Program-made: the position numbers and the translations under genes
Shown here: positions 1 to 64,000 of the stretch, one piece after another
How the letters are laid out: each line of letters starts with the position of its first letter
Numbering within the stretch: the stretch's first letter is position 1
Source of the DNA: Lytechinus pictus
Lineage: Eukaryota
Direction: 5' to 3'
Length of the DNA: 64,000 bases
Assembly: GCF_037042905.1 (NCBI RefSeq)
Contig: NC_087248.1
Coordinates: 9,672,001-9,736,000 of the forward strand
The notes under the pieces: generated by a model
The model's database searches: none
Seen by the model: the letters and a program-made list of their open reading frames with translations, nothing else
What the model was told of the DNA's origin: nothing

Positions 1-124
1 TGTTGTCCTTTCGGGTCATCATACCGGCTCCATCCAGGTAGCAATTATTCGCGAAGTCGTTTGGCGTGAGGCGCTGGAATCCGGCTTCGAGTTGGGGCAG
101 CTTAATAGCAAAGGCTACATCGAC
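1..124 (-). CDS. SBP-like gene exon (VDVAF...GAGMMTRKDN), continues beyond window
   Basis: Acceptor ttttcaataccatcaag; open frame to window edge; completes the NGQVDVAF motif. Confidence 0.82.
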
Positions 125-3100
125 CTTGATGGTATTGAAAAGCGAAAATGAAAAGTTGTTAAGATCATTTGTGGTGTGTGAGTGTGTGCCCCGGCGTGTG
201 TGTGTATGTTCTAGTCAAGGTATCGGTTGTATTAGAGTGATTCACTCTGATTCTTTTATAAGCGGCAATCAAAACTATCGGGGAAATGTGACTGCAGCAT
301 TGGGGAGTACTGTTTGTACTAATAATTTGTTGTCCTTACCTGGCCATTCGTTAATGCTTGAATCAGTTCGAGTCCAGTAGAAAAATGATGAATGCGATCA
401 GATGGGACACTAGCACCCTATGATACGAGAAAAAAAGAAAGAAGGTAACAGTTACCATCCAAACAACCAAACGTAACTTAAAGTGTAAAATATTTGATAT
501 TGTCAACTGAATTTATCAGGCTTAAATGAAAGAAAAATCCAATGAGAGGATCGATCTGGGTGGAAAGAGTAAAATGAGGGGTTCAATATACAAATAGTTT
601 CATCAAAACCAGTTATAAAATAAGAGAGGATCCTTAACTTGGCAAACCTGCTTAAAAACGGCTGATTATGTGAAAGACTCTCCTTTTGTTTTGTACACAA
701 ATCAGGGGTGGCGGAAGGGGGAGGGCAGGGGCCACTCGCCCCTCCCAAAAAAAATCCCCATAGGAAAATGCTCTTCTTTCAAAATGGAAAGTGTCTTCTT
801 TAAAAAAGAATTGTACCCCTTTTAAAAATGAATTGCCCTTTTTAAGTTAAACATAATACATTTTAGGTTAGAAAATCGCAAATACTTTTGCCTTGCGCTT
901 CGCGCTCGCATCAATTATTGTTTAGTAAGGTACTCGTTGACTTCCTGGTTACGAAAAATGCTTAGAATATCTAGTTTTCAGTTTGAAATATCACAAACTT
1001 TGAGCCCGCGCTTGCACCTGCATTATTCGATTGGTGAGATGTGTATCCTTCGCATGAGTCACTAAAATAATGCAGTCCTTACCAAGTTCCTTTTCTGGTC
1101 AGTATATGCAGATATGAAATCATATCTAGGGTTCATAATCAATCTAACCATGAAAAAAAATAGGGATCCCCGTTCTTTCTGATGAGCTACAGTGAATTTT
1201 ATGTAAGCATATTTTTGCCATTTATGACCTATTGTGAGAGATTGCACGCGCGCGTGTTGCAAACTGTATGGACGCGCATTCTCTTATTGTCGATTGTAAA
1301 AGGTTGAACCAGGTATCAAATTGCTCAAAATTTAATGGGCATTGATATACTGACATAACAAATACGACTTTATGCTGCATTATGATGTTACGCGAAAACT
1401 TAATAATAATAATAATGATAATAAAGAAAATTCTGACGAAATTAAGGATTGAAGAAAATCCATCATAGATAAAGACCGACTGAAGATACAGTAAAATTCA
1501 CTTTCAATTATTAAGAAAAAAAGAAATTTCACTGATTTTTTAAATTCATAAAATTCTAATAATTTTTCTAAATACCTTTGATGAATTTTCTTCAAACCTT
1601 CACCGATATTTTTTCTTTATTCTGCTATTTTTACAATTAACTTTTTGTCAGGGTAAACTTCCCCTTTTAGATGTCGACTGTGCATCCAATACGCTATAAC
1701 CTCAATGCACGCGCGTCAATACAGTGCAATTACTCTCGTATTAATACAATACATCACCATGTATATACAAGGAAATCAAAAGCAGATACCTCTTCTCCCA
1801 CGGAACTCTCGGACGATAATAGACCTTTACGAGTACCTTTACGAGTACCTTTTTACGAATACCTACCATTCTAAGGATCCGCATTGGACCATATTGCCAA
1901 CTAAGTAGCTTTGACGAATTTGATTACAATGGTATGCTTTACTATTCTTGAATAAGTTTTAATTTTTTTTTACTTTTAATTCATATGGACTCTATTACAC
2001 ATTTGATAAAAATGCTTCATGAGGGTAATTATTTGTCCAACTAACATTGGGCATTTCTTTTGGCATTTTTATTTATCCAGTGTGATGAAAATTTTGCCCA
2101 TTCTAAAGTAATTGCTGCGTATTTTTTAACCTTGCTTGACAATTTGCTTCCCGCATTGGGTAAAATACTGCCCCAACTTGGTTGGACACCTATAATTAAT
2201 CTCGTGCTGGTTAAATTTTACTCAATATTTTTTTTTTACAGTGATGGGTGCGAACTGAAGTCCGGGGTATGTTTTTCATTAAATTGTCCTCTTTTCAAGA
2301 GATGACATTGGTACTGCCAATCGTTCAGACATACATGTTTTATCACAACATGGCAAATTTACTATGAAGATCCGAATTTACGTCGATTCAATCATTATTC
2401 AATTATCACTATCATCAATCTAAAATAATAATGTGAAAAGTGATCCCTTTTCATTCAGTTCTGTTTATTTAATCAATATCAAATAAATTTTACTGCAGAT
2501 TTGAAATAAAAATGGTAAACTTATTAAGGACAAACCTATCAACTTTACAAGGCTCACTCATCACATCAGGATTTCGTACATTAGTCTCAAATTTAGTTTT
2601 AGGGTCTTTAAGGTCACATTCTTAAGACCCTTTTAATTTACGTTATACAGTAATTTCAATGTCATATACTTCTTTACTCGCTTCGCTTGCACTTATATCA
2701 AGGGGAATCCAACCTTGGTAGAGAAGAAACCAACAAAATGTTGAAAGTTCAAACGAAATTGGACAAGAAATAAGAATAATAGTCGACTGGATGTACATGT
2801 AAGATATTAGATTACCATGTAAACTTCAAAATGGCAATTTGGTGGTAAATTTTAACAAGAGGTAGGAATAACGTTCCCATAGCCTGTGTACTTCAGGGAC
2901 TTTTCGTTTTCTCATAAGCAAACATCCCGATGGGGGTCTTGATCAAACAGTATCACAGACATCATTTTATCTAAATCATCATGGAAGATAGATGTTTTAT
3001 GGCGTAAACCTTTTGAAAAAAAATATTGTCATTATTTTCTTTAGCAATTTTTTGTATTGGAACAAAAGAAATTAAGAGTAGTCCTTATCCCATTTCACCA

Positions 3101-6100
3101 TGACATCACCAATGTGGCCAATTTGAAGTCTCCAGATATATAGGGACTTAAAATTTGTACAACTTTTATAAATTCACACTTTCACTTACCGCTTTGTCTT
3201 ATTGTTCTTAATCTTCTAAATACATCTTTCCATTTCCCTTTAATATCCGAGCTACTCAGTGGTCATCATACTCAAAATTTAAATAAGAATTTTTTTTATT
3301 AATTAGTAGGCCTAATCTATGTAATATTCATTATCATTATTGTTGATTATACTTGCTTATAGCGCTCATTACTTACTTTTTAGGAAGTTTCTAAGGGCTC
3401 TAAAATAAATAATGCAGCAGAATCACAAAGGCCTTTGCAAAGCAGAGCGTTTGAAAATATTAATTCATGTCACCAACGTCCCAATGTATCTCACCTGACA
3501 TTGAGTAAAGCAAATTGGATATATCTTTTGCTGAAGGAACTTTATGTGGTGTGTACTTTTGAAGCGTTATTTTACCCTGAGGTTAAGTTTATTTTGATGA
3601 ATGTAAAAAAAAAGATGTGGAAAAATATTAGAGAAAGTTCGATGAAAATTCGTCGAAGAATGAAATAATTACGACTTTTTAGGTTTTTTAATTTGTGACG
3701 TCATATGCGAGCAGCTCCTCCGTTGTCATGTAATAAACTTCCTTAAATTCGTTTTTTTTTGTTTAAAGAACATGATGAATGTGAATATTCTGATCATCAC
3801 TTGACCAAAATTATCCATTGTGAAAATAACGAATTTTTCTCGCTCGGACTCGCTCCTCGCATACAAATAATCTATACTCATTTTTCAGAACTGATGTCGC
3901 AGTCCCGAAACCACTTTCAATTTTTCGGAACAGGCGAAATTTCTCCCCCCCCCCCCCCCCCCCATTCGCATTACCATCCGATTGCATCAATCCACCCCAA
4001 TGCAATATCTTTGTTAACAAGAAGTTTGAAAATTCATTGGTATATCGACCAATTACTGATTTTCTACTAAAATTTCATATTAGGTTTTTTCTATTTTCTA
4101 CTCGAAGTGTGTCGACATTTTAAAGGTACAAACTGGATTCTTCCTCCTCTGGTGGTTGCTTCACGGTGAGTATACTTCTTTTTTTAATCTGCCATCCTCA
4201 TAATCATAATCACAAGGAAGACGGTTGTATTATTGTATGTGGATTTTGAAAGATACTTTTTTATATATTTCTTTTACATATTAATATTTTTCATGACAAA
4301 CTGATTTTTGGATGAATATATCTTCACGAAAAAAGTAGAAATTTGTGAAATGAAAAAAAAAAAAAAACAATAGGTGGGGTTTAAGAAGGGATTTCATACA
4401 TCAGTATAGATACTATCCCAAAGCCTGGGGGCTATAACTGAGGATTCTGTCACCGTAGTTTTTAGTTCGGAGTCCCGGTGGCAGTTGGAGATGGGCAATA
4501 GTGTAATAATAATACCAACACATTTTATAATCCTCTGAATGCTATGAATTATAACCTGTCTACACACGAAATTTGTATCTACTGTCGCAATATCATATAG
4601 GCTTTCTGGCCTAATAAATGTATTTATTAGAATATCTTCGATAATTATGATTTCCATGGCAGCAGTGAAACCATTTAACTAATTCACGCTTGGATGATGC
4701 TATGCTTTTATCAAATACAGTTAAAGGGGAAGTTCACCCTGAAAAAAAGCTTATCATATATAAAAGTAGTAGAAAAAAATAATAACAAATATTGACGATG
4801 GTTTGAGAAAAATCCATCAAAGAATAAAAAAATATCAAAATTTCAATTATTTGATTAGTGCCGTCATATGCGAGTAGGTTTCTTACACATCGTATGGTGA
4901 AAAATCAATGAAATGTCATTTTCTCCGAAAGTTGAAAATGATTTATACGCTACCTTCAGTATATCAATAGACAAATCATTTCACACCTGTCCCTAAAAAG
5001 AAAACAAACGCTGCTCAAAATGTTGAATTCTTTGATCTAAATATATATAAAAAAAAAATTGAGCTCGCGCTTCGCACTCGCATGGTATTTGATATTCTGG
5101 CCACACGAAATACCTTTTCTTGTTTCTAAGATGAGAATTTAGTTAAAAGGACCCTAACATTTAAACAAGTGGAACGCCTCTGGCAGTCTCGCCTGCATTA
5201 CGCGATTTAATATAAAATAATCATTCACAAAAATACCATTCATATAATGACATAATATCACGTTCATTGACCATAAATGGCATTTGAACGGTGACTTAAG
5301 ACTTGTCAACTACACCCATGTCCACATTTCATTCACTCTATCCATAAACTTTCAAAGTTATGATGGCAATTCAACACTTACCCCAACATGGCCTAAGTTT
5401 GACCTGAACTGACCTTTGACCTCGGTTTTGTGACCTGAAACTCACAGGGGATGTTCAGTGATACTTGATTAATCTTATATCCCAAGTTTTATGAACTAGA
5501 TCCATAAACTTTCAGAGTTAGGATGGTAATTCAACAAATACCCCCAACACGGCCAAAGTTCATTGGCCTTAAATGACCTTTGACCATGGTTATGTGACCT
5601 GAAACTCGTACAGGATGTTTAGTGATACTTGATTACTCTTATGTCCAATTATGAACTAGATCCATCAATTTTCAAAGTTATGATGGTAATTTAACAAATA
5701 CCCCCAACACGGCCCTAGTTCATTGACCTAAAATGACCATTGACCATGGTCCTGAAACTCGCACAGGATATTCAGTGATACTCGATTAACCTAATGTCCA
5801 AAATTCATGAACTAGATCCATAAATTTTCAAAGTTATGATAGTAATTCAACAAATACCCCCAACTTGGCCAAAGTTCATTGACCCTAAATGACCTTTGAC
5901 CTTGGTCATGTGAACTGAAACCCAGACAGGATGTTCACTAATACATTAACCTTATGTCCAAGTTTCATGAACTAGTTCCTTAATTTTTCAAAGTTATGAT
6001 AGTAATTCAACAAATACCCCCAACTTGGCCAAAGTTCATCGACCCTAAGTGACCTTTGACCTTGATCATGTGACCTGAAACTCAAGCAGGATCTTTACTA

Positions 6101-9100
6101 ATACCTGCTCAACCTTATGTCGAAGTTTCATGAACTAGGTCCATATACTTTTTAAGTTATGATGTCATTTCAAAAACTTAACCTTCGGTTAAGATTTTGA
6201 AAATAATTCTCCCAATATGGTCTACGTTCATTAACCCTAAATTACATTTGACCTTGGTCATGTGACCTGAAACTCAGGCAGGATGGTCAGTAATACTTGA
6301 TTAACTTTATGGCTAAATTTCATGAACTAGGTTCATATACTTTTTAAGTTATGATGTCATTTCAAATACTTAACCTTAGGTTAAGATTTGATGTTGACGC
6401 CGCCGCCGCCGTCGCCGTCGGAAAAGCAGCGCCTATAGTCTCGCTCTGCTATGCAGGCGAGACAAAAACCAAGCGGAACGCCTCTGGTAGTCTCGCCTGC
6501 ATTATGCAATTCGATATAGCAGCAGTGCTGCAATTGAAAAGAGATTATGATAATAAAATATGTCCATTGACCCAAAATGACCTTTGGTCATGATCATGTG
6601 ACCTAAGACATGCGCAAACAATTATTCATACTTGATTACCCTAATATCGATGTTTCATGAGCTAGATCCCTAAACTGTCTAAGTTATGATGCCGATTCAA
6701 CACATCCTCCCAACACGGCCTGGGTTCATTGACCTCTAAATGACCTTTGATTTTGGCCATGTTCCTGAAACGCGCACAGGGTATTCAGGGATACATTGCT
6801 GCTCTTATATCCAAGTTAAATGAACTAGATCCATAAACTTTTAAAGTTATGATGACGTTTCCACAAATACCCCAAACATTACCAAAGGTTGTTGACCTTA
6901 AATGACCTTTGGCTTTAATCATGTGACCTGAAACTAGCAAAGGATGTTGAAGGATAGTTGAAGCTCATATGTCCAAGTTTGATGAACTAGACCCATAAAA
7001 TTTCAAAGTTATGATAATTCCTCAAATACCCTCAACATGGCCAAAGTTCGTTGACCATAAGTGACCTTTGACCTTGGTCATGTGACCTGAAACTCGCGCA
7101 TGATATTCAGGGATACATGGTTGCTCTTATGTCCGAGTTTCATGCACTAGATTCATAAACTTTTAAAGTTATGACAATTCCTCAAATAACCCCAACATGG
7201 CCAAAGTTTGTTTACCCTAAGTGACCTTTGACCTTAATCATGTGACCTGAAACTCAGGCAGGATCTTCAGTGATATACTATTACCCTTATGTCTAAGTAT
7301 AATGAACTAGGTTTATATACTTTTGAAGTCATGACAGCATTTCAAAAACTTAACCTTGGTTAAGCTGGATCTGCCCCTAAAGAAAATGTGACTGAGGAGA
7401 ATCGGTAACTCTACCATGACTGATGGTCGTCGGATGTCGGTAATCGGTACCGACATTTGTCGGTATTCAAGGCCTTTACACCCCCCCCCCCTGGAAAAGG
7501 CCTAGCGACGCCCCTGTATGAGATTAGATTACAGAAAATGTAGACATGACTATATCAGTTTAATATGGTTTATTTTACTTTCATGTACAGTACAGGTCAA
7601 AAGTTTGGGGCCACCCTCAAATTTAAAAGATTATCATACATAACACTGCATTCTGCATATAAGCAAATTAATAGGCTATGATAGTTCCATTATATTACAC
7701 AAGCATGTTTCCAACTGATTTCGACTGCACTTATGTGAATCCCAGTTGGTTTTCATATTCAAATTTTATGCAAACCTTTAAAATTGACAGGTATGCATAC
7801 AATTTGAATATATTTAAAACAAAGGTTGTTTTTGATAACCTGAAAGTTTGTCCGAGGCTGGTGGCCCCAAACTCTTGGTCTGTATGCCTACTGTAGAGTT
7901 TGTTTGAATTGAAACAGTATTCGTGACGATGTATTTAGTCAACTCCATTGGCACCCGGTCCAATACCCATATTCAATTCTCTATTTTTTCGCCTGGTATG
8001 ATCAACATAAAAGTTAAATCCTGATTCTCCAATGTCATATACAATTATGATGTCAATTGTATACAATAATGCAGTATATTTTTATGAATCTATGTCGGTC
8101 AATGTAAACACCCTTTGAGTTTATTAAATTTGTTACATCTTGTATTAAATGTCATTGTGTGATGAACTGAATGAATACATTGAGTACCCAATACTAATAT
8201 GGTCCACGGACAATTGAACAATATCGGCTACTAATCATTTCTGTTAAAGGCCATTCTTGGTCACGTGTGCGACCGAAACTATGACAAATCTTGACTTTAA
8301 TTAGTTGCAAATCAAAAATATTAAGGATTTAGTAATTCAACAGTTATAAAACATTATCATGTTTAGTCAGCTATCATTTGGAAATATTTTTTGCTGTCTC
8401 TAATTTGCAGGTTCAAAGTCAGAGGTAAAAAGAAATGGATAACGTGTTTGACTTCACACAGAAGCATGACTTTGAAACTTTAATTTCATTTTGAAATTCA
8501 TGTGAATTTCAAAACTGAATTTAACTTTCAAAGACATCCTAATTAGTTATACATCTCTAACATTTTTAGATTTATAACTAATTAAAGTAATGATTTATCA
8601 TAATTTCTATCAAACACGTGACCAAGAATGGCGCTAAAAACCAGTAAAGGTCCGTGGTATTTTGGTCTAAATGTCATTCAGTCTAATCAGAGAACAATCA
8701 TTGCTGTTTTACAGAATCCCATGGTTAACTGTAGTTTATATACTGTATATTAATCAAAATACAAATTTATGCATTGTGCACCTTGTTTATTCTAAGTTAT
8801 GACATTGCAAGGAATGTTTGTTACATTTATTTTGAATTATTTCTTGTGGATATGAATAAAAATGAATCATGATCATGAATCTGTTTGTAACAGGTACTGA
8901 CGGAGTGGGATCATGTCCCTCCGTTCAACCCGATGCCCCCTGTCCTTATGGTATCTCTGAACAAACAGGAGAAACTCTGAAACTGGTTCCCAAGTATCTA
9001 CCACGTGATCATCTTGAATATGACGTCAGAACTCCAAAAGAACTGAGAGACAAAGTCAACCTGTACTGCACGCAGCCAGGTAATCGACAACTCAACGGTG

Positions 9101-18100: not shown

Positions 18101-21100
18101 TCAGCATTTGGTTATTTTTTGCCAGGCCAACCAAGATTTCGAATTTGCTTTTTACTCGTAATTGTATGAGATTTTTTTTTCTTGTGTGTGCATTAATCCA
18201 TCACGCCTAGAACACACCACTGACAGCGCTATGCGCATCCACTTTGAATATATTAAATTATTCTCTTAGAAAATTGATATGACCTTGCATTAAAAACATT
18301 ACCATAACTGTATTTCAGGGCGGAAGAGGTGTCAGTCTCCAATTATTTTTTTTATTTGTGAAAATGGAGGAGAGAATGAAGAAGATCATAAAAAGAGGGG
18401 TTATGTGTTCTATCTGTGTAAAACCATATTTTGAACGATAAAAATGACGTCATCTAAATATTATATTGCACTCCCAAGTCCGAACCGCTATACACCACGA
18501 TGTCAGAATAAATTCATCAATTTTCAATTGTCTTTTATCATTCGGCACAAGAAGAAAGTTAGCTGGAAAAAAATGAAACATTCTTTTTCTCTTAATGAGT
18601 GTTAAACATATCTAAACAATATGATTTGGATCAAAATCTTCCTACGTTTATATTTATTTTCTTATACATTCTATTCATTTTCTTTTTGTTTTAGATTTCA
18701 TTCATTCTCCGCAAAGCTGATTTGCGAAAATTGATTGAATCGTTTGAATTTGAATAGAAATTAAGAAGTTTGTACTTGATTTTGATTCCTATTGGTTTGA
18801 TTAGGCCTATTTTAATTACGTATTTTTAGTGAAGGCAAACATTGTAAAGCCGAAGAGTCTCTGTAAGTTAGGAGAAATTTAACAAATGTGATCTGGTAAT
18901 ACAGCTAAAGCAGTCTTCTATGTAAGTTGTTATTGTTTGTAAGTATCTAATACTCAGGAATGAATAGTAAAAAAAAATCACGGTCATTAACAAGTCTAAT
19001 GGTTAATTCCGAGTGATAAAAACTCAGACGACCCACAAATATCCCTAGTTACAATTCGTTATTTCGTTATTCTAAAATGTTCAACAGTCCAAAAATTCAT
19101 TATTTCACACGTTAGTCAGTCTAAGGATTATACAGGAGGTTCGTCCGAAATTAAATAAGGTTCAATATTCGGGAAGATTCTGAAGGTTTGACAGCCCCAA
19201 AATGAAGTAATGTTCCTATAGTCTATTTGTTATTGTTTTTTGTTGTTGTACTGAAAACCTTATTACATTTTCGAACTCTTTATCGAAATTTTGGAATAAT
19301 GAACCTTGTTACAATTCAAGAATAAGGAACTGTAGGAGCAGTGTTTACCTTATCTTATACTCGGATTTACGAACCTACGAAATAACAATCCGAAAAAAAT
19401 CAGTAGCGTAATGAGTTAATGGCGTATGGGGTAACAATTTCTTTATAGAAAAATGCATGTACACAAGAGTCAAATTCTGTGATAGATTTGACATAATATT
19501 TGGAAAATAATACCACATTTCACACTTTTCCTTTCCTTTTCTTCATTTTCTGATGTTTTTCTTGGTCGGAAAAATTGGGGCTCCATGGCCCCCAAAGTCC
19601 CCCCCCCCCCCCGAAAAAAACCCTGTACACCCGTGACCTGCTTAATAACAGATTAGTTGATTTATTGGGTTGATTTGATATGATAAAATGATTTCCGTTT
19701 CACATTTGTACATAATATGATGAACATATTACAATTAATTAAAACAAATATTACAAAACACAATATGACAGGTACAGATTAATGATTACGTTTAAGTTTG
19801 CCAGATATATAGTTGCACAACATACAATACCGTGCGAGAAAAAAAAACTTGACACCTCACAAATCCCCAAATATTTCATGAACACATATATATATTATAT
19901 ATGGCCTGAAAGAGTATCTTATCCCGAATAATTTTAGACCATATTTACGTGGTATGTCTTCACGCTTGGATGATCAAGGGGTATTCTTTGCAGTAATGCA
20001 AATTTTTATTTGAGCCAAAGAAAGGCGTGACTGCAATAAATGAATCAAGAGGCCAATTATGTCATAATCACACATGATCATGAGTTATAGTAAACACATT
20101 TGCAAATCCCTTTTCAATGAAATTAGCTTGAGAATTGATACTAAAAACTGTTTATTAAACAATGATAATGTAAATTATTGAGAAGGTGTTTTGAAATGGT
20201 TTTTAATGCAACCCTTGTAGGATTATGACACCATTGACATCTGGATTCATTTATTGCAGTCATGCCTTATATTGGCGCAAATCCAAATTAACATCACTGC
20301 AAAGAATACCTCTTGATCATCCAAGCGTTAACACATACCGCATAAAAAAATTGGAGAACATACTTTTTCAGGCCATATATAATTATGGGTTAAAGACATA
20401 TTTTTCCTTATTTTAATTGGGGATTTGTGAGGTGTCAAGTTTTTTTTACTCACACGGTAGACATGGAAGAGAAATGTATTAAAGTGTAATTACCAAAATG
20501 TTTTCAGCCTCATATCTAGCTAAGCAATGTTCATCCGAGGCCCATCCGTCGATGAAGCCGACGTTGAGTCCAGTTAGATTACGAAAGTTGATGGTCGATG
20601 ATCTCGGAGCGTAGAGGGCTACGTCCTTTCTTTTCACAAAGGCTCGGGTGAAGTCAAAACTTAAACTTCTCGGGTAGGTTTTAACCCAACCTGGAATGAA
20701 AGAGAGTCAGAGTGAGGCTAGAAAAGAAGAAGGCCGGGTTGAAGTATCATTATCATCGTCGTTATCATCGTCATCATCACCCTCGTTATCTTTAATACCA
20801 TTGTCATCATCATTACCACCACCTTCATCACTATCATATCATCATCGTCATCCTCCATCGTCGTCATCATCATCATCATTGTCATCATCATCATCATCCT
20901 CCATCGTCGTCATCATCATCACCATCATCATTTTCCTATTTACCATAATTCTTTATCACCATTTTCATCATTATCGTCATTATCATTATAATCACCACCA
21001 TCATCACACATCAAAATGTTCTTAGCCATCTTGACCGTCGACATCACACCAACTTCCAAATTCATTTTCCCATCCACCTCACCTGTGCACGCATCGTACC

Positions 21101-23601
21101 AACCGGACAGCAATCCCTCTCCTCCCCGTGCCTGCTGGCCTGGTTCCGAATCCCAACACCGTTGGTTGACGTCCTTCATTAGAACGCAAGTCTTATTAGC
21201 GAGCCGACAGACTGAAAAAAATGATCAAAATAAATCCCTTGAAAACATTAATATTGATTACAAAATGCTGAATACATAACAGAACGACAGAGAGGGTGAG
21301 AAAGTAGGTAGGTAGGAGAAAGTGAAAAGGCATATAGGCAGGCTGGATAGGAGGGAATAGGCATTCAAGATCCACTTAAAACAGCCGAAAAAGAGTGACT
21401 ACATAAAATATCTTCAGAATTATTAAGGCGTTTATCCACAAATCATTCATATTCATTAAGGGGGAAATTACCGAATTTACCGGATATACAGACTGCGCAA
21501 ACTCCTGTATTTGTGTTGCGAATGGTACATTATACATTACACACACTTATTATATCCCCTTGGCAGAGAAGGGCTTGAACAACAACTAAAAATCGACAAA
21601 TAAAAATACATTTTACCGTTGCCCCAAGATGAGTGTTGATTAAGCGGAATAAATGCATTATTGGAAATTGCATGTCATCATTAAAATGCAGCGAGTGAGC
21701 TGATGATGTAATCTACCTACTTTTCTTATGTATTCCATATCATAGTATAAAATGAAATTGTAATGATTTCAATTTTCTGCTCCAAGAATGTACAAATATG
21801 ACCGACTACTGATTGAATGTACCTCTGCTGAAACTTGTTATGTGTGATAAGAAACATAAACTAATTAAATAGAATGAAATAAGGTAAAAAGAACGAGAGG
21901 TCATGACATCATTTACTCGCTCATTGCGTATTCATGCCAAAATGTGCGAGAACCATTTCGGATAACAAATAACGAAGTTATTGAATTTTAAAGATTTGCA
22001 TTATTCTGGTGAAACAGTTCTAGGCATGTCTTTATGAATATTAATTAGGTGGGCTGATGATGTCATATCCACAATTGTTCTTTTGTACACTCTAAATTAC
22101 AGGGATTTAAAATAAATCCTGATCGGCTGTGAATAGGGGCCAGTCGATTTTGGATTTAGATTTAAATCTTAAAGATTTAGATTTAAATCTTAAAGATTTA
22201 GATTTAAATCTTAGAGATTTAAATTTTAAGCATTTGTGGATTGAATATAAATCCTTAATATTCAAATCTAAATCCAAAATCGACTGGTCCCTATTCACAG
22301 CCGATCAGGATTTATTTTAAATCCCTGTAATTTAGAGTGTATTTTATCGTATGACATTAGGTTTATTAAAAAAAAATTCTACCAAGAACTAAAGTAATTG
22401 GATCGACAACTGATTAGTTATTTATTGCCGCAACTTATTTCATCATAATGGAGACACATCATTTACACATGTATGAAAAAATGAAACATTTATGATTTCA
22501 TGTAATAACAAAAGAAAAAGAAAAAGTGGGATGTGACATCATCATCAGCCCACCTAATGAACATTCATGATAATGTGCATATAACTGTTTTCACAAAATA
22601 TTGTTAAACTTTAAGATTCAATAACTTCGTTCCGATATTGATGAAATTTTCAGCATTTTGCTTTATGAACTTTACTCTGTTTATTTAGATATATTTTCAG
22701 CCCGGACCATCCCTTTAAAACCCAAAGACTATCTATTATTTATTCAATGATTATGAAATGTTCACCATTTTGCTCCTGTACTTTAATCAAATTATATCAT
22801 TTGGGGAAAGGCGTTCCCCTTCGACAGTTTTGCCACCCAATATAGGCACATGTGCTAGACTTCTCCCGAGACCAGAAGAATTTATTCAAATCCTTAATAG
22901 GTTAGCGTGCTTGCAGTTTCGAAGGTAAGGGGTGGAAGAGGGGGGGGGTCATATGTCATATCCTACCTGCTTCGACCACATCAATGTTGTATCCTTTGAT
23001 CTGATAAGACGCCTCGTCCCTGAGAAGGGGATAGAAACCAATCAACAACAGGTGTAATCAAACTGAAAGGATTAACACTTACTGGTACACCTTTCTGGTG
23101 CTATAACCATGCAGCATCTCCGCGTCTTATGGTAGTGCATTTCTTCTATACTTTCTAACCGTTATCTGTGTTTGAAAACATTTAATTCATCATTCACATG
23201 CCTTTTGGAATTAATAATTTAATAAATCTACTTTCAACTTTAGCTGGTAGGCATATAGGTATCGAAACGACTTACAATCAGGGTGAAACAGCTATACGAG
23301 ACACCATCCGGGAAAAGTGTAATCAGAACATGCACGTTCAGAGGTGATGCACGCCAATGGCCCTGGGAAGCGGGTGTGCTGAGGGTGCTAAAGCACCCCC
23401 AAATTTTAACTTTGGGGGTGCTGCGTATGTTATTTACTATAGGCAGCACCCCTTGATATCTGGTATGCTATATAACATAAATGTAACCAAAATGATCTTC
23501 ATTTTTAGTGAGAACCTGTTTTAGCTTATCTAATTTTTCTCGCACCAAAATCACCTTCATTTTGTAGTTAAATACATTTTTATTTTGTCTTTTATTTATT
23601 A

Positions 23602-23632
<31 letters not shown>

Positions 23633-24675
23633 TGCTTTTCAAATTTAAGCCAGCCCCCTGTTAAAAGACAAAACCGTTCCTAGGCCCATGTGCAAGCCCC
23701 TGGTTTGTCTGCATATCAATAGGAAATACTATTTCTTCAATTAAAGGAGAATGAAACTCTTGGAGCAAGTTAGCTTTTGTGAAAGCAGAAAAATCAAAGA
23801 ATAAGATCAACAAAAGTTTGAGTAAAATAGGACTAGCAATAGAAGAGTTATGAGCATTTGAATGTCGAGATCACTAATGCTATGGAGATCCTCCCATTGG
23901 CAATGCGACCAAGATCTATGATGTCACAGATGAACAACTCTCCCCTTTTGGACACTGAAAATATACCCCAAAACATCTATTTTTGCTCATTCTAATCATA
24001 TGACAAACGATTCATCAATGATATAATGTTGTGAAACCTCTGTACTTGTCCTCTTATAAAGAGAACAACTCACCTTGTGATAGACTCTATAAAAGTGAGA
24101 ATATAAGTGAAATAAGTACTAAAGTAATGAGGGAGTTGTACGTGTGTGACATCACAGATCTTGGTCGCATTGCCAATTGGAGGATCTACATGGCATTAGT
24201 GATCTCAATATTCAAATGCTCATAACTTTCTTATTATTCATTCAATCTTCCTCAAACTTTCAACAATATGTTTCTTTGATTTTTCTCTTTGATATGGATT
24301 CGGCTGGTTTCAAGGGTTTCATTCTCCTTTAACGTGTGGATTTACATCGGAGCAGTTGTCGCCGGGTTAAAGTCATAAGACCGCCGCGATTGGCCTTTCG
24401 TAGATGATCGTGGAAATTTTTAACCATTCATTTTTTTTCTCTCTACGATCAATACGATTGCCACGGCTAATCTAAACTGATACGATCTGATCAAATCACT
24501 ACGATCACTCCACGATTAGGTACGCAGTGTAAATCGTGACAGTGAGGTACTAGGTATATAACAAATCAGCAGTTTGCTCTTTATTAATTTTGAAATTGAA
24601 CTTTCATTGATGATAATACTTACAGATACTCAAGGTTGACACCAAAATCTCCGATTGCTAGGGTCCACACCTTCT
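1..24675 (-). CDS. Spliced gene (5' and 3' incomplete) for a stand-alone type-2 periplasmic/solute-binding protein (SBP_bac_3, HisJ/ArgT-like): complement(join(<1..124,340..417,20494..20690,21083..21211,22967..23019,24624..24675))
   Basis: Six GT-AG exons with compatible phases splice into one stop-free frame: (E)KVWTLAIGDFGVNLEYLDEASYQIKGYNIDVVEAVCRLANKTCVLMKDVNQRCWDSEPGQQARGGEGLLSGWYDACTGWVKTYPRSLSFDFTRAFVKRKDVALYAPRSSTINFRNLTGLNVGFIDGWASDEHCLARYEAENILGASVPSDRIHHFSTGLELIQALTNGQVDVAFAIKLPQLEAGFQRLTPNDFANNCYLDGAGMMTRKDN. Motif order matches SBP_bac_3 as I recall it (GFDIDL..C-x6-C, GL.SG..D, T..R...DF, L.G..VG, AL.NG.VD, RKD). Confidence 0.8.
340..417 (-). CDS. SBP-like gene exon (GASVPSDRIHHFSTGLELIQALTNGQ)
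   Basis: Acceptor ttctcgtatcatag, donor gtaagg; 78 nt, phase 0 to 0. Confidence 0.85.
1929..1931 (+). CDS. Putative ATG-only first coding exon of the lectin gene
   Basis: acaATG|gtatgc: A at -3 and a donor immediately after ATG, giving the phase 0 needed by exon 4108. Confidence 0.45.
1929..16593 (+). CDS. Secreted EGF-like + C-type lectin domain protein, ~260 aa: join(1929..1931,4108..4165,8894..9079,9965..10069,12535..12834,16463..16593)
   Basis: Exons total 783 nt with no internal stop: hydrophobic signal-like segment (GFFLLWWLLHG), Cys-containing N-terminal region, 6-Cys EGF module, then CTLD (CPDGW...KCF...NWQSARLFC...WMNCND.DVEGTWVC...NW..NQPDN...DC...MDDGGC...TVCQ). TAA is followed directly by AATAAA. 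The first two exons are less certain. Confidence 0.8.
4108..4165 (+). CDS. Lectin gene signal-peptide exon (CVDILKVQTGFFLLWWLLH)
   Basis: Polypyrimidine tract + aag acceptor, strong donor G|gtgagt, ends in phase 1, hydrophobic core. Confidence 0.65.
4370..4660 (-). mobile_element. Degenerate LINE (L2/CR1-group) 3' ORF2 remnant
   Basis: Minus-strand SVIAPRLWDSI resembles the FS..APRLWN.LP C-terminal tail of L2-group ORF2. Confidence 0.45.
5163..6468. mobile_element. Non-autonomous Helentron/HINE-like element with internal ~160-bp tandem repeats
   Basis: Subterminal inverted repeat GTCTCGCCTGCAT (5186-5198) / ATGCAGGCGAGAC (6451-6463), terminal hairpin GTCTCGC..GCGAGAC (6438-6463), A-tract flanks; ATGAACTAG recurs at ~5491, 5651, 5807, 5967, 6130, 6322. 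Confidence 0.65.
6469..7364. mobile_element. Second head-to-tail, end-truncated copy of the Helentron-like element
   Basis: Same start motif (aagcggaacgcctctggtagtctcgcctgcat) followed by ~160-bp repeats (6657, 6820, 6982, 7142, 7302); terminal hairpin absent. Confidence 0.6.
7588..7893. mobile_element. MITE, Tc1/mariner-like
   Basis: TA|CAGTA...TACTG|TA ends; imperfect TIR agtttggggccacc / ggtggccccaaact. Confidence 0.6.
8248..8635. mobile_element. MITE
   Basis: TIR gccattcttggtcacgtgt / acacgtgaccaagaatggc. Confidence 0.6.
8894..9079 (+). CDS. Lectin gene exon, N-terminal Cys-containing region
   Basis: cag acceptor, cag|gtaatc donor; 186 nt, phase 1-1; within ORF 8869..9120. Confidence 0.8.
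9474..9541. repeat. (TA)n(TG)n microsatellite
   Basis: Direct reading. Confidence 0.85.
9965..10069 (+). CDS. EGF-like domain exon (CHSHTCLNGGTCVEELDGYSCVCVAAYEGVHC)
   Basis: Canonical EGF Cys spacing; tttcag acceptor, gtatgt donor; 105 nt, phase 1-1. Confidence 0.92.
10582..12176. mobile_element. TIR element containing a nested MITE
   Basis: Outer IR gtgtttcca...ttttccccattcacttttg / caaaagtgaatggggaaaa...tggaaacac. Confidence 0.55.
10661..11505. mobile_element. Nested MITE with GGGGTAAGTTG motifs
   Basis: TIR aggggagggcggggtaagttg / caacttaccccgccttcccct; internal ggggcaagttgag repeats. Confidence 0.6.
12535..12834 (+). CDS. C-type lectin domain, first exon
   Basis: CPDGW...C...W..A...C...W.NCND..VEG.W.C; cag acceptor (alternative in-frame tag at 12543), gtaagt donor; 300 nt. 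Confidence 0.92.
13345..13650 (+). mobile_element. L2-clade LINE 3' ORF2 remnant (frameshifted, internally deleted)
   Basis: LHWLPIRHRITFKLLLSVYKSLNN from 13452, then degraded AFTVA..NKL.SHIKTI..TDSFKKS motifs typical of the L2 ORF2 C-terminus. Confidence 0.75.
16463..16593 (+). CDS. C-type lectin domain, terminal exon with QPD motif and stop
   Basis: ttttttcag acceptor; NWNKNQPDNPRSDCGFLYIVTGGMDDGGCSSPKPTVCQINIPS*. Confidence 0.9.
16594..16684 (+). terminator. Candidate polyadenylation signals of the lectin gene
   Basis: AATAAA at 16594-16599 and 16679-16684, just after the stop. Confidence 0.5.
16720..17219. mobile_element. MITE with TTAA TSD (Kolobok-like)
   Basis: TTAA|AGGGGTACTCCAGGCTGAAA ... 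TTTCAGCCCGGAGTACCCCT|TTAA. Confidence 0.75.
17487..18010 (-). mobile_element. LINE (L2/CR1-group) 3' end: ORF2 tail, 3'UTR stem-loop and (AAATC)n tail
   Basis: ORF 17630..18010 contains FNSFAERIRTLPNLNSF; minus strand ends cagccattggctg...aataaatcaaatcaaaatcaaatc. Confidence 0.7.
19830..20457. mobile_element. MITE with TA TSD (Tc1/mariner-like)
   Basis: TA|ccgtgcgagaaaaaaaaacttgacacctcacaaatcccc ... ggggatttgtgaggtgtcaagttttttttactcacacgg|TA. Confidence 0.75.
20494..20690 (-). CDS. SBP-like gene exon (GWVKTYPRSLSFDF...EAENIL)
   Basis: Acceptor ctttcattccag, donor gtaatt; 197 nt, phase 1 to 0. Confidence 0.88.
20746..21003. repeat. Degenerate (TCA)n microsatellite in SBP-gene intron
   Basis: Direct reading. 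Confidence 0.85.
21083..21211 (-). CDS. SBP-like gene exon (VCRLANKTC...GLLSGWYDACT)
   Basis: Acceptor tttttttcag, donor gtgagg; 129 nt, phase 1 to 1; overlaps ORF 20940..21179. Confidence 0.88.
22088..22339. mobile_element. Young foldback MITE with TA TSD inserted in an older Kolobok-like MITE
   Basis: Near-perfect ~75-bp TIRs (cactctaaattacagggatttaaaataaatcctgatcggctgtgaatagg...), internal 21-bp tandem repeats; host resembles 16720-17219 and ends tttcagcccggaccatccctttaa near 22718. Confidence 0.8.
22967..23019 (-). CDS. SBP-like gene exon (DEASYQIKGYNIDVVEA)
   Basis: Acceptor ccccttctcag, donor gtagga; 53 nt, phase 2 to 1. Confidence 0.85.
23745..24328. mobile_element. MITE with TTAA TSD (Kolobok-like) and long internal inverted repeats
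   Basis: TTAA|AGGAGAATGAAAC ... GTTTCATTCTCCT|TTAA; IR ttggcaatgcgaccaagatct / agatcttggtcgcattgccaa. Confidence 0.75.
24624..24675 (-). CDS. SBP-like gene exon (KVWTLAIGDFGVNLEYL)
   Basis: Acceptor ttcattacag, donor gtaagt; 52 nt, phase 1 to 2. Confidence 0.8.
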
Positions 24676-25172
24676 CTGTAATGAATAATCAAACGACAAC
24701 CATGAATGTCAAGAACATTGAAAAAAAAATTAGATGCGACATATTAAGGCTCGTAATGTAAAGGCTTGGTCCCACTTCACTTACGGATGCAGAGAGGATG
24801 TAAAACGGACAAGAATATTGCCATCCGTTGGGAAACGTTATGTATCCGTTGTGTACTCTTTACGCTCTATATCCATCGAGCATCCGTCCACTCTGATTTC
24901 ATTGTTCGCCCATTTTGTCCATTGTCTGGGAGCGGATGAAAACCGATGGAGCCAACCCGAAATTTTGCTTGTCCACTGTACCCGTTATGAATACGTTTTG
25001 TGTCCGTCGGCCAGTGGGACCAGACCTTTATTGAATAATCAAAGAAGAATTGAAATCCAAGGAACGCTATATAACAAAGAGATTCCTCTGTCATTAAACC
25101 TACAGAAGAATTTGAATTTAAAGCATTGTAGTACGCAGGGGCGGAAATCTTTCACAAAAGGTAGGGGGGACA

Positions 25173-27369: not shown

Positions 27370-28710
27370 GGGACAAGGGCGGGAAAATTTGACAAGCAAA
27401 AAAAAGGTTATCATCCCAAAAGTACGGTCATCTCGTCCCAACTCGTCCCAAAATACATGTTTTATTTCGATTCAGAATAATGCATTTCTTACCATCATAA
27501 AAGACAAAAAATATTAGGGGGGACAATTGATATTGTGTCCCCCCCTACTATTTTGAGTAGGGGGGACACGTCCCCCCTGGGATTTCCGCCCATGGTAGTA
27601 CGGCGGTCATAAAGGCCGTAACAACAGCAAAAACACATTCAACAGGTTATATAAAAACGAGGGTCGTTGCTATGTCAGTAAATATGTTGCCGTTTTAGGC
27701 ATCATTGAGCCCCTCCACCTGCTCGATATAAATTACCACGTGTATTAGGATAGTCTTTATACAAATACCCTTTCATAAAACAAGATGAAATAAACTGAGA
27801 ATTTTTCATAAAGATTTTTTTGGGGGTCAATCAATTTTAATAAAAAAAAAAAAACTTGGAAGCAAAATATAATCATTTGATTCCTTTGCAAGTGTTAATT
27901 TGTACGATGAATGGGGGAAGAGAAGCGGAAAATTGGTTATCATCCTCGAGTGTAATGGTCAGACTACATGATCAGAATGTTGTATCATGGGAACCACAGG
28001 AACTACATCAGTTTAGGTCATGGGCTGGCGCTGTTCAATTTTAATTTCGTACATTGGGTTTAAATGGTATAAGAAACTCCATGGGTATGATATAATCATT
28101 CCATACATCGTATATCGGTTAACAGATGGCATTGGTCCTTATGAAGTCTCAATGTTAATTGTGTTACAATTATAATCAACCATCTTTACCTTGCTTGATA
28201 CTTTCACAATTCATTCATTCAACCTAATTCATATTGATTATATGATTGAAGTTGGTTAAAATATGTACTTAATAACTACTGGTAAAAAAAAAAACATGTA
28301 TGCAAAATGAACTGGGAGTATAGGGTCATTATTTTATAACAAATTCAAGAATACTTTGTATTTTTTCTTTTATTGTTATTTAGTAATGTATACATTTCAT
28401 ATTTTACAAGGATATTTATTTATGCTTATCTACGGAAATCTGTATCATTTATTATTGTTTGTATTGGGTTGTTGATATTTGAAAATGTAGAATGTTGACA
28501 TGAATAAACCTTGAAATTTGAAGCTTCTATATTAATTGTCTTAACCACCGGTCAGGAAGTTTTTAATGAACCTTTGAGATGGTACGAACATATTATGAGA
28601 GTGTACAATGAGATTCCATAATGATGATGATTTCAACTAGAAATCATTATAAATTATTCATTATAAATATGCTTTCAAATCTTTAAACAATTTTTTAATG
28701 AGCCGTCAAA

Positions 28711-28783
28711 GCCCGGTTAGCTCAGTCGGTATAGCATCAGACTTTTAATCTGAGGGTCGCGGGTTCGAGTCCCTCATCGGGCG
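28711..28783 (+). tRNA. trnK: tRNA-Lys(TTT), G22>T
   Basis: Array copy; D-stem mismatch. Confidence 0.75.
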
Positions 28784-29185
28784 ATGGTAACCATTTTCAT
28801 GAAAGTTATGATATAAGCCCTTTACGTTTTTGACATATAAATGTAATCTACATTTTATTTACACAATGCAAAACTTCCAAATGCCTTATCTTTTTCGATA
28901 TCGAATCTTGATAAATGTTTGTATATTTCATTCTAAAAATTCGGCTCAACTCATTATTCAAAATATAATAATTATTACTGGAGATTTAATAATTGAGAGG
29001 CTCTGTATTTAATATTCCATGAACGAAATTTGTTTTTAAATGAAACAATCTATCTCTATCTTAGATTTAGAGGTTAATTTTGCGATGAAATATAAAAAAA
29101 ACTAAGAAAATGTGAACTAATTAATCAAGGACATCATTAGATCACTTATTAGATTTTAATTCATGTTGATACACAACAAACTCAA

Positions 29186-29258
29186 GCCCGGTTAGCTCAG
29201 TCGGTAGAGCATCAGACTTTTAAGCTGAGGGTCGCAGGTTCGAGTCCCTCATCGGGCG
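29186..29258 (+). tRNA. trnK: tRNA-Lys(TTT), T39>G G51>A (possible pseudogene)
   Basis: Array copy; stem mismatches. Confidence 0.65.
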
Positions 29259-63957: not shown

Positions 63958-64000
63958 ATGTTTATCATTTTTCATGAAATTATGAAACAATGCAACATTT

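What the first reader, a model, noticed from the sequence alone, without database searches (positions are those of the whole stretch)
1..24675. Intron-containing animal gene for a stand-alone bacterial-type amino-acid solute-binding protein (HisJ/ArgT-like)
Seen: six short minus-strand exons, almost invisible to the ORF track, splice in phase into one contiguous domain. Known: its motif order matches ABC-transporter periplasmic binding proteins of family SBP_bac_3. GYNIDVVEAVC-x6-C parallels GFDIDLAKELC-x6-C, the disulfide pair of HisJ/LAO-binding protein, and T-x-x-R carries the carboxylate-binding Arg. In animals this fold is best known as the iGluR ligand-binding domain, split by transmembrane segments; here no TM segment interrupts it. 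Inference: a soluble, probably secreted protein (four extra Cys), either ancient or domesticated by horizontal transfer. The amino-binding Asp that follows GR.DA in bacterial proteins appears replaced (GQVDVAFAI), so the ligand may differ.
Basis: partly seen in the sequence, partly recalled or inferred. Interest (0 to 1): 0.8.

Follow-up and report, generated by a model that had tools for sequence, protein, structure and literature searches.

The report
Sea-urchin gene for bacterial-type binding protein
This is a real, spliced sea-urchin gene for a small stand-alone protein with the fold of bacterial amino-acid-binding proteins. It belongs to an old, unstudied animal family found in echinoderms, a brachiopod and an annelid, whose members are normally tethered to the cell surface and whose ligand is unknown.

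Summary
The window is Lytechinus pictus C4:9672001-9736000. Its minus strand carries six in-phase exons with canonical GT..AG sites, and stranded RNA-seq confirms the ex2/3, ex3/4 and ex4/5 junctions.

- **Gene model:** the complete gene has eight coding exons. Exon 1 (a membrane anchor) and exon 8 (the stop) lie just outside the window. They give an intact 314-aa ORF, 306/314 identical to a L. variegatus protein that passes Pfam SBP_bac_3.
- **Closest relatives:** profile and fold searches put bacterial LAO, HisJ, ArtJ and GlnPQ binding proteins nearest. No iGluR appears.
- **Conserved features:** the HisJ Cys-x6-Cys pair and the carboxylate-binding Arg are kept. The amino-binding Asp and the Ser residues are lost. 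Six further Cys are conserved.
- **Topology:** 20 of 21 relatives have an N-terminal hydrophobic anchor, so the canonical protein is a tethered ectodomain, not a soluble one.
- **Age:** four intron positions and phases are shared with Lingula and Owenia, so the gene predates the protostome-deuterostome split. It is not contamination or recent transfer.
- **No transport partner:** the genome has no ABC permease domain.

Two caveats apply. L. pictus RNA joins exon 2 to a repeat-derived 5' exon that lacks the anchor. All reads also carry the variant of a 99.4%-identical copy 80 kb away. I found no paper on the family, though public annotation already flags the domain. Function is inferred only.

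The parts
24785..24824 (-). Coding part of an alternative 5' exon ('1b'). ATG at 24824-24822, donor GTAAGT at 24784. It gives the N-terminus MAIFLSVLHPLCI-Q joined to exon 2. It lies inside a ~270-bp interspersed repeat (window 24760-25030).
   Evidence: Joint 24675/24785 with CT..AC ends: 28+20 stranded reads and the X1 contig, but absent from the sister-species contig X5. Sequence read, in-frame stop at 24869-24867. Repeat: 992 first-look candidates in the genome (40 scored, listed copies 85-91% identical). The 5' end of this exon was not determined.
24624..24675 (-). Coding exon 2 (52 nt): (E/Q)KVWTLAIGDFGVNLEY-L, the start of lobe 1 of the binding domain.
   Evidence: tblastn against P0001. 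Splice joints on both sides in RNA. Borders ttacag|AGAAGG .. GTATCT|gtaagt.
22967..23019 (-). Coding exon 3 (53 nt): DEASYQIKGYNIDVVEA.
   Evidence: Joints 23019/24624 (35+14 reads) and 21211/22967 (19+11 reads).
21083..21211 (-). Coding exon 4 (129 nt): VC-x6-C (the HisJ-type Cys pair C94/C101), then the family-specific Cys-rich insert CWDSEPGQQARGGEGLLSGWYDAC.
   Evidence: Joints. hhalign to HisJ aligns C94/C101 with C38/C45 and shows an 11-residue insert.
20494..20690 (-). Coding exon 5 (197 nt): GWVKTYPR (invariant Arg143, equivalent to HisJ/LAO Arg77), the hinge, and the start of lobe 2. Position 20660 is C here (Ser146) but G (Thr146) in the downstream copy and in all RNA reads.
   Evidence: Joint 20690/21083 with 18+21 reads. 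SNP table 3 (22/22 and 26/26 reads).
340..417 (-). Coding exon 6 (78 nt): GASVPSDRIHHFSTGLELIQALTNGQ.
   Evidence: Exact peptide match with borders tcatag|GGTGCT .. GGCCAG|gtaagg. Present in the NCBI L. pictus partial models P0057/P0059.
1..124 (-). Coding exon 7 (217 nt; runs on to -92 beyond the window start): VDVAFAI... GMMTRKDN ... TVH-G. The HisJ Asp161 position is Ile234.
   Evidence: Weak Pfam SBP_bac_3 hit on this exon alone (E 0.079). hhalign.
418..20493 (-). Intron 5 (20 kb). It holds at least one + strand EGF-like exon.
Evidence: Exon borders. EGF Pfam hit on window:9895-10170:+ (32.7 bits).
24825..64000 (-). The in-window part of the ~45-kb interval between distal exon 1 (window 70009-69838, outside) and exon 2. 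It holds the tRNA-Lys array.
   Evidence: Exon 1 found at C4:9741833-9742009, 97% identical to residues 1-59 of P0001. It is intact, with donor AAAAAG|gtaagt in the right phase. 74 tRNA-Lys genes.

Best explanation
The region is most of a real protein-coding gene of the sea urchin Lytechinus pictus (eight coding exons, about 71 kb). Its canonical product is 314 aa long. It has a short cytoplasmic N-terminus, one hydrophobic signal-anchor helix, a short unstructured stalk, and a roughly 250-residue two-lobed 'Venus flytrap' domain of the bacterial SBP_bac_3 (type-II periplasmic binding protein) family. Eight conserved cysteines probably form four disulfides.

The gene belongs to an uncharacterised bilaterian family seen in echinoderms, a brachiopod and an annelid. 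The family expanded by tandem duplication.

Inferred mechanism: the ectodomain sits on the cell surface and closes around a small carboxylate-bearing ligand held by the invariant Arg143. The ligand is not necessarily a standard alpha-amino acid. The genome has no ABC permease and the tail has no signalling domain, so the loaded domain would have to act through another membrane partner (a transporter or receptor) or simply capture ligand at the surface.

Shown: gene structure, splicing, fold, family membership, conserved and lost pocket residues, antiquity. Inferred: topology, disulfides, ligand binding and any partner.
For: - **Gene and splicing:** searches give an intact 945-nt ORF with all sites GT..AG. 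It is 306/314 identical to P0001.
- **Species:** contig length 32,991,779 equals that of an L. pictus protein's contig.
- **Family:** P0001 scores 32.3 bits on PF00497 against a cut-off of 26.4, and 8 of 9 homologues pass.
- **Sequence relatives:** a profile search of PDB sequences puts bacterial GlnPQ-SBD, STM4351, ArtJ, HisJ and LAO on top (E 7e-28 to 1e-9). No iGluR is among the 60 best of 70 hits at E<=0.01.
- **Fold:** the AF2 model has pLDDT 84.4 and pTM 0.73. Its best Foldseek hits are LAO and HisJ, E 1.7e-15, TM by target 0.71. AFDB cluster hits are all bacterial SBP-type domains.
- **Residue mapping:** hhalign to E. coli HisJ has probability 97.8% and E 1e-12. It gives C94/C101 = C38/C45, R143 = R77 and D161 -> I234. 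The ArgT alignment agrees.
- **Conservation:** eight Cys and R143 are invariant or nearly so across 21 sequences.
- **Anchor:** the 19-residue Kyte-Doolittle hydropathy window reaches 2.7-3.6 in 20 of 21 members, after N-terminal tails of up to ~45 aa. AF2 predicts a helix at residues 8-36.
- **Antiquity:** four introns share position and phase in urchin, Lingula and Owenia. The tree separates echinoderm sequences from a Lingula/Owenia clade.
- **No transport partner:** no BPD_transp_1 in the genome, while all 14 control genomes hit.
- **Paralogues:** at least 10 further loci in the genome, and tandem neighbours in Lingula.
Against: - No ligand, partner, localisation or phenotype is known. I found no paper on the family.
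- Of the LAO pocket residues that could be aligned (D30, F52, S69, S70, S72, R77, Q122, D161), only R77 is kept. F52 is Tyr in most members but Asn in this orthologue. The domain could therefore be non-binding, as in MltF, or catalytic, as in cyclohexadienyl dehydratase.
- In the L. pictus RNA that I laid, exon 2 is joined to a repeat-derived exon, not to the anchor exon. The transcript seen would encode a 270-aa form with only a weak hydrophobic N-terminus (hydropathy 1.56).
- All 48 reads over position 20660 carry the base of the downstream copy, so the window copy itself may be silent or may be a haplotype duplicate.
- Disulfide pairing and pocket geometry could not be checked because model coordinates are not returned.
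Confidence: 0.6

Rival explanations
1. The window copy is not itself a working gene. It may be a very recent tandem duplicate, or a falsely duplicated haplotype in the assembly. In that case the expressed gene is the 99.4%-identical copy 80 kb downstream, which has no anchor exon of its own and uses the repeat-derived 5' exon.
For: - Exons 2-8 occur twice (C4:9670613-9696679 and 9589757-9619216), with a third partial copy of exons 6-8. Exon 1 occurs once.
- The copies are 99.2-99.5% identical and differ by a 585-bp and a 3.1-kb insertion or deletion.
- The only exonic difference in exons 2-5 is at 20660. All 22/22 and 26/26 reads and the X1 contig show the copy-2 base. The intronic site 23427 behaves the same way (19/19 and 7/7 reads).
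- The 1b/exon-2 joint has as many reads as the internal joints.
Against: - The window copy has an intact ORF and intact splice sites, and it lies next to the only exon 1, whose donor is in the right phase.
- At 20270/20271 the reads differ from both copies, so the RNA animals carry alleles that are not in the reference. The 20660 base may likewise be allelic.
- Thr146 is the ancestral state, also found in L. variegatus.
- Exon 1 words are held at 0.82-0.95 by other L. pictus runs, but these are not on record as RNA.
Confidence: 0.35
2. The domain is a ligand-free or catalytic derivative of the SBP fold, for example a structural or adhesive surface protein or an enzyme. It would then not be a small-molecule binder.
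For: Most pocket residues of LAO/HisJ are replaced, including Asp161 and Ser70/72. The SBP_bac_3 fold is known to have been reused for cyclohexadienyl dehydratase and for the MltF N-terminal domain, and both appear among the weaker PDB hits.
Against: - The carboxylate-clamp Arg is invariant across phyla.
- An aromatic residue at the F52 position is kept in most members, and the GMMTRKD lobe-2 motif is kept.
- The best hits are true binding proteins, 6-20 orders of magnitude better than the dehydratase or MltF.
Confidence: 0.15
3. The sequence is bacterial contamination or a recent horizontal transfer into the urchin lineage.
For: The nearest sequence and structure relatives outside the family are all bacterial. 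The family is missing from well-studied animals, as far as these searches show.
Against: - The gene has seven spliceosomal introns confirmed by RNA and sits in a 33-Mb chromosome-scale contig among animal repeats and tRNA genes.
- Orthologues exist in four echinoderm classes, a brachiopod and an annelid.
- Four intron positions and phases are shared across protostomes and deuterostomes.
- A very old transfer into an early animal is not excluded.
Confidence: 0.03
4. The exons are the ligand-binding part of an ordinary ionotropic glutamate receptor or another large receptor whose remaining exons lie outside the window.
For: iGluR ligand-binding domains share this fold.
Against: - Exon 8 ends in a stop 1.3 kb beyond the window.
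- Orthologues are 297-354 aa in three phyla.
- The RNA contigs are 1.1-1.4 kb.
- There is no Lig_chan or Lig_chan-Glu_bd Pfam hit at E<=1.
- No iGluR chain appears among the PDB profile hits.
Confidence: 0.02

Closest known systems
Bacterial polar-amino-acid ABC-transporter binding proteins: LAO/ArgT, HisJ, ArtJ, STM4351 and the GlnPQ SBD1/2 domains (Pfam SBP_bac_3, type-II PBP)
   Same: - Same two-lobed fold (Foldseek E 1.7e-15, TM 0.71).
- Profile match E 7e-28 to 1e-9.
- Same Cys38-Cys45 pair, same carboxylate-binding Arg77, and the same G-x-G-x-R-K-D lobe-2 motif.
   Different: - It is an animal gene with seven introns.
- It has an N-terminal transmembrane anchor and stalk instead of a cleaved signal peptide or lipid anchor.
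- It has an 11-residue Cys-flanked insert and six extra conserved Cys.
- Asp161, Ser70, Ser72, Asp30 and Gln122 are not kept.
- The genome has no ABC permease.
Ligand-binding domain (S1S2) of ionotropic glutamate receptors
   Same: It is an extracellular type-II PBP fold in animals, with an Arg that clamps the ligand carboxylate. The fold similarity and the Arg role are from established knowledge.
   Different: - The domain here is continuous, not split by pore segments.
- There is no Lig_chan-Glu_bd or Lig_chan Pfam hit.
- No iGluR chain is among the PDB profile hits at E<=0.01.
- The acidic residue that binds the alpha-amino group in iGluRs sits at the Asp161-equivalent position, and it is absent here.
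Membrane-tethered substrate-binding proteins of Gram-positive bacteria and archaea, and SBP-type sensor domains of histidine kinases (e.g. PDB 3h7m, BvgS)
   Same: Both are surface-tethered SBP domains that work next to the membrane. 3h7m is among the structural hits (rank 25) and BvgS is among the sequence hits.
   Different: Those proteins are lipid-anchored, or are fused to a permease or kinase that transmits the signal. Here the anchor is a bare type-II helix with a 7-45-residue tail and no known partner.
Public gene models: 'arginine-binding periplasmic protein-like' and 'uncharacterized protein' of L. variegatus, S. purpuratus, Diadema, Anneissia, Amphiura, Holothuria, Lingula and Owenia
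   Same: They belong to the same family. The L. variegatus model P0001 is 97% identical over 314 aa.
   Different: For this L. pictus locus the public models cover only exons 6-8 (119 and 120 aa). The names come from automatic annotation, and I found no experimental or comparative study.

Membership tests
Pfam SBP_bac_3 (PF00497) / type-II periplasmic binding protein fold | Whole-protein HMM score above the curated gathering cut-off (26.4 bits) | tested here: met
   P0001, 306/314 identical to the window's spliced product, scores 32.3 bits. Eight of nine family members pass and the ninth scores 25.8. The window's own spliced peptide could not be submitted because it has no reference. Exon 7 alone gives E 0.079.
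Pfam SBP_bac_3 (PF00497) / type-II periplasmic binding protein fold | Two alpha/beta lobes joined by a hinge, superposable on solved SBPs | tested here: met
   AF2 model pLDDT 84.4, with the domain mostly above 90. Foldseek against PDB: LAO and HisJ at E 1.7e-15 to 2.9e-14, TM by target 0.61-0.71.
HisJ/LAO-type polar amino-acid binding proteins (functional class) | Arg77 that binds the ligand alpha-carboxylate | tested here: met
   R143 aligns with R77 in hhalign to HisJ and ArgT. It is invariant in 21 sequences.
HisJ/LAO-type polar amino-acid binding proteins (functional class) | Asp161 that binds the ligand alpha-ammonium group | tested here: not met
   It aligns with Ile234. The column is variable across the family (I/A/T/R/P/S/G/H), with no conserved acid.
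HisJ/LAO-type polar amino-acid binding proteins (functional class) | Ser69/Ser70/Ser72 loop and Asp30/Gln122 pocket residues | tested here: not met
   - S69 aligns with a gap.
- S70 aligns with the invariant Gly136.
- S72 aligns with Val138.
- D30 aligns with Asn86.
- Q122 aligns with Asp188.

The pocket residue list was taken from the LAO mutant entries and from established knowledge.
HisJ/LAO-type polar amino-acid binding proteins (functional class) | Cys38-Cys45 disulfide pair | tested here: met
   C94 and C101 align with C38 and C45 and are invariant in the family. Actual bond formation was not testable here.
ABC importer system (binding-protein-dependent transport) | A cognate membrane permease (BPD_transp_1, PF00528) encoded in the same genome | tested here: not met
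   A six-frame search of the whole 812-Mb genome found 0 matches at E<=0.001, while all 14 control genomes hit. Exon-by-exon searching is less sensitive, so absence is likely but not proven.
Ionotropic glutamate receptor | Binding domain split by pore-forming transmembrane segments (Lig_chan), with the Lig_chan-Glu_bd signature | tested here: not met
   The domain is continuous and a stop follows it. No PF00060 or PF10613 hit at E<=1 in nine members. No iGluR among the PDB profile hits.
Type-II (signal-anchor) membrane protein | A single N-terminal hydrophobic helix of about 20-25 residues, not cleaved, with the C-terminal domain outside | tested here: inconclusive
   Hydropathy is 2.7-3.6 over 19 residues in 20 of 21 members, preceded by tails of 4-45 aa, and AF2 predicts a helix at 8-36. 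Cleavage and orientation could not be tested. The RNA-supported L. pictus 5' exon lacks the helix.

The most novel reading that the evidence does not exclude
Bilaterian ancestors had a family of cell-surface-tethered, disulfide-braced bacterial-type solute-binding proteins that work without an ABC transporter. Echinoderms, brachiopods and annelids kept and expanded it. It would act as a capture or sensing device for dissolved small carboxylates (amino-acid-like nutrients or microbial cues) in sea water, handing them to a eukaryotic transporter or receptor. That would be a kind of binding-protein-dependent uptake or chemosensing not described in animals.
Probability: 0.3. Interest if true: 0.75.

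Novelty: new variant of a known kind. Interest (0 to 1): 0.52.

Why it matters
In animals the type-II binding-protein fold is known almost only as a module inside large receptors, such as the iGluR ligand-binding domain. This is a free-standing, membrane-tethered version that is closer in sequence to bacterial HisJ/LAO than to any iGluR. The shared introns make it as old as the protostome-deuterostome split, and it was lost from the usual model animals.

If it binds a ligand, it would show how an SBP can work in a eukaryote that has no ABC importer. It could also bear on how soft-bodied marine invertebrates sense or take up dissolved organic compounds. L. pictus is a genetically tractable urchin, so the question can be tested.

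At present the result is a well-supported gene and family annotation with an open function. It also corrects the public L. pictus models, which cover only the last three exons.

Tried and rejected
- **Pfam on single exons.** Only exon 7 gave a weak SBP_bac_3 hit. A whole-genome six-frame PF00497 search did not flag the window itself. Exons are too short, so family membership had to be shown on the full-length orthologue.
- **Spliced peptide of the window.** P0001 (97% identical) stood in for it.
- **The search for homologous proteins with profiles A1 and A2**. These found no new named taxa; word selection limited the search.
- **The search for related loci on bacterial genomes**. No bacterial donor clade could therefore be sought, and the tree has only E. 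coli HisJ and ArgT as outgroup.
- **ESM Atlas**. It returned only generic bacterial SBP_bac_3 clusters.
- **Literature.** Seven searches and one paper look-up found nothing on this family.
- **Unnamed transcript contigs** (P0014, P0024, P0036 and others). They look like eukaryotic mRNAs, with UTRs and one AATAAA signal, but their organisms could not be identified.
- **In-frame inclusion of exon 1b between exons 1 and 2.** No AG acceptor in a compatible phase lies downstream of the in-frame stop at 24869-24867.
- **Which 5' exon is joined to which copy.** This could not be settled. The second run search shows only that exon 1 words occur in other L. pictus runs of unknown type.
- **Disulfide pairing and pocket geometry.** Neither could be computed, because model coordinates are not returned.

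Full report
**Where and what.** The window is contig C4:9672001-9736000 of an 812-Mb animal genome. The contig length, 32,991,779, is the one recorded for Lytechinus pictus proteins. The best relatives are from L. variegatus, S. purpuratus and Diadema. The genome is therefore L. pictus.

**Checking the observation.** Reading the minus strand shows short exons with canonical borders.
- 24675-24624
- 23019-22967
- 21211-21083
- 20690-20494
- 417-340
- 124 to -92

I laid two stranded L. pictus RNA-seq runs and two contig sets on 20000-25500. The minus-strand GT..AG joints are:
- 20690/21083: 18+21 reads
- 21211/22967: 19+11 reads
- 23019/24624: 35+14 reads

First mates lie only on the + strand. 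A 1147-nt same-species contig and a 1438-nt contig from the sister species cover these exons. They rest on orthologue colinearity and on the NCBI models P0057 and P0059, which join exons 6-8.

**The whole gene.**
- A phmmer search of 1.84 billion representatives with exon 5 returned P0001 (314 aa, 97% identical) and 36 other hits.
- Searching the genome with P0001 found exon 1 at C4:9741833-9742009. That is window 70009-69838, about 6 kb past the window end. It is intact and its donor is in the right phase.
- The last exon lies 1.3 kb before the window start and ends in TAG.
- Joined, the eight exons give a 945-nt ORF of 314 codons with no stop. It is 306/314 identical to P0001.
- No further domain follows. 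Orthologues in three phyla are 297-354 aa. The gene is stand-alone.

**What the protein is.**
- P0001 passes Pfam SBP_bac_3 (32.3 bits against a cut-off of 26.4), as do 8 of 9 relatives. None hits the iGluR models.
- A profile of 21 family members matches PDB sequences of bacterial GlnPQ binding domains, STM4351, ArtJ, HisJ and LAO (E 7e-28 to 1e-9). No iGluR is among the 60 best of 70 hits.
- An AF2 model (pLDDT 84.4) is most like LAO and HisJ (E 1.7e-15, TM 0.71). Its AFDB neighbours are bacterial SBP-type domains.

hhalign against E. coli HisJ (probability 97.8%, E 1e-12) and ArgT gives the residue map:

| This protein | HisJ/LAO position | Status |
|---|---|---|
| C94 / C101 | C38 / C45 | kept |
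| R143 | R77 | kept, invariant |
| I234 | D161 | lost, variable column |
| gap | S69 | lost |
| G136 | S70 | lost |
| V138 | S72 | lost |
| N86 | D30 | lost |
| D188 | Q122 | lost |
| N108 (Tyr in most members) | F52 | partly kept |

An 11-residue insert sits between C111 and C134. Eight Cys are conserved in the family: C94, C101, C111, C134, C191, C255, C292 and C311. Amino-acid specificity is not supported beyond the carboxylate clamp.

**Topology.** Exon 1 encodes a 25-residue hydrophobic stretch. The 19-residue Kyte-Doolittle hydropathy window reaches 2.7-3.6 in 20 of 21 members, after N-terminal tails of up to ~45 residues, and a low-complexity Ser/Gly stalk follows. AF2 predicts a helix at 8-36. 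This is the pattern of a type-II signal anchor, so the canonical product should be a tethered ectodomain rather than a soluble protein. That is an inference. The many Cys and the NKT and NLT sequons fit an extracellular location.

**Age and origin.**
- Named family members come from sea urchins, a crinoid, a brittle star, a sea cucumber, the brachiopod Lingula and the annelid Owenia. There are also unnamed mRNA-like contigs.
- I mapped exact exon structures for a Lingula gene and an Owenia gene and projected them onto the alignment.
- Four introns share column and phase with the urchin gene: columns 214 (phase 2), 232 (phase 1), 376 (phase 0) and 458 (phase 1).
- Two further introns are shared by Lingula and Owenia only.
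- A maximum-likelihood tree separates the echinoderm sequences from a Lingula/Owenia/unnamed clade with support 90/97.
- The window's orthologue group spans Lytechinus, Strongylocentrotus and Diadema.

This rules out contamination and recent transfer, and puts an intron-bearing gene in the common ancestor of protostomes and deuterostomes. A still older transfer from bacteria cannot be tested with the outgroups I could obtain.

**How it may work.**
- The genome has no ABC permease domain (0 hits, against 14 of 14 control genomes).
- The cytoplasmic tail is short and carries no domain.
- The family is expanded by tandem duplication, with at least 10 more loci here and neighbouring copies in Lingula. 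Such expansion is typical of environment-facing genes.

My best reading is a surface Venus-flytrap that closes on a small carboxylate-bearing ligand through R143. It would then act through an unknown membrane partner or as a capture protein. I put this at about 40%. The identity and structure of the gene I put above 90%.

**Complications in L. pictus.**
1. *Alternative 5' exon.* RNA joins exon 2 to an exon ending at 24785, with a GTAAGT donor (28+20 reads, as many as the internal joints). The sister-species contig lacks this joint.
   - This exon lies in a ~270-bp interspersed repeat with 992 first-look candidates in the genome (40 scored, listed copies 85-91% identical).
   - It has an in-frame ATG at 24824, giving a 270-aa product whose N-terminus is only weakly hydrophobic.
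   - It cannot be an in-frame insert between exons 1 and 2.
2. *Duplication.* Exons 2-8 are duplicated 80 kb downstream at 99.2-99.5% identity, with a third partial copy. Exon 1 is single.
   - The only exonic difference in exons 2-5 is 20660: C (Ser146) here and G (Thr146) in copy 2. All 48 reads and the contig show G.
   - Reads also differ from both copies at 20270/20271, so allelic variation cannot be excluded.
   - The window copy may be silent, may be a haplotype duplicate, or may simply carry a private allele.
3. *Public models.* The public L. pictus models for this locus cover only exons 6-8 (119 and 120 aa).

**Known or new.** Public annotation already lists relatives as 'uncharacterized' or 'arginine-binding periplasmic protein-like' with PF00497. 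I found no paper on them. I class it as a new variant of a known kind: an SBP_bac_3 domain in a new setting (animal, intron-rich, type-II anchored, four putative disulfides, no ABC partner, remodelled pocket).

**Other features in the window.** Other features seen in the window are listed under Noticed in passing.

Noticed in passing
window 28711-63957, + strand: A tandem array of 74 tRNA-Lys genes (mostly anticodon UUU, some CUU) with a period of about 454-490 bp. It lies antisense inside the ~45-kb interval between the gene's distal exon 1 and exon 2.
   Followed up: partly
window 9895-10170 (+) and 12690-12971 (+), inside intron 5: A + strand ORF with a clear EGF-like domain (Pfam EGF 32.7 bits). 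A second ORF looked C-type-lectin-like by eye but gave no Pfam hit.
   Followed up: partly
G000:C4:9589757-9619216 and 9563787-9565596 (80 kb and 106 kb below the window copy): A second copy of exons 2-8 at 99.2-99.5% identity and a third partial copy of exons 6-8. The copies differ by a 585-bp repeat present only in the window (23744-24329) and a 3.1-kb insertion present only in copy 2. This is either a very recent tandem duplication or haplotype duplication in the assembly.
   Followed up: partly
window 23680-24415: A repeat with very high RNA depth on both strands (about 280-580 reads per base, against 15-20 on the gene's exons). It has sharp loose ends at 23740/23741 and 24332 and is absent from copy 2, so it is an expressed interspersed element inserted in intron 2.
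   Followed up: no
window 24760-25030: A ~270-bp interspersed repeat with 992 first-look candidates in the genome (40 scored, listed copies 85-91% identical). It supplies a splice donor and an ATG for an alternative 5' exon of the gene.
   Followed up: partly
about 9.7 kb before the window start (window coordinates -9663 to -9698; locus L006): A degenerate exon-5-like fragment (HC*ARYDADKIL, with an in-frame stop) next to the same Met/Asp-rich low-complexity run seen after exon 4. It resembles the second L. variegatus paralogue P0058, so it is probably the remnant of a lost paralogue.
   Followed up: no
window 1867-1884 and 2046-2066, minus strand: The NCBI L. pictus models for this locus (119 and 120 aa) begin at short alternative first exons here (MRILRM and MPKEMPN) and contain only exons 6-8. 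The public annotation therefore misses exons 1-5.
   Followed up: partly
window 22107-22320, both strands: Near-palindromic ORFs on both strands (repeats of the ...LDLDLN.KDL... type). RNA shows 'opposite strands' joints in 21990-22640, so this is a hairpin-forming repeat in intron 3.
   Followed up: no
G000:C9:2226947-2279404; C4:12.74 Mb and 13.69 Mb; C3:8.45, 40.50 and 55.38 Mb; C6:22.32 Mb; C21:16.08 Mb; C2:23.05 Mb; C5:43.75 Mb: At least ten further loci of the same family in the L. pictus genome, including a tandem cluster on C9. Some exon matches carry in-frame stops.
   Followed up: no
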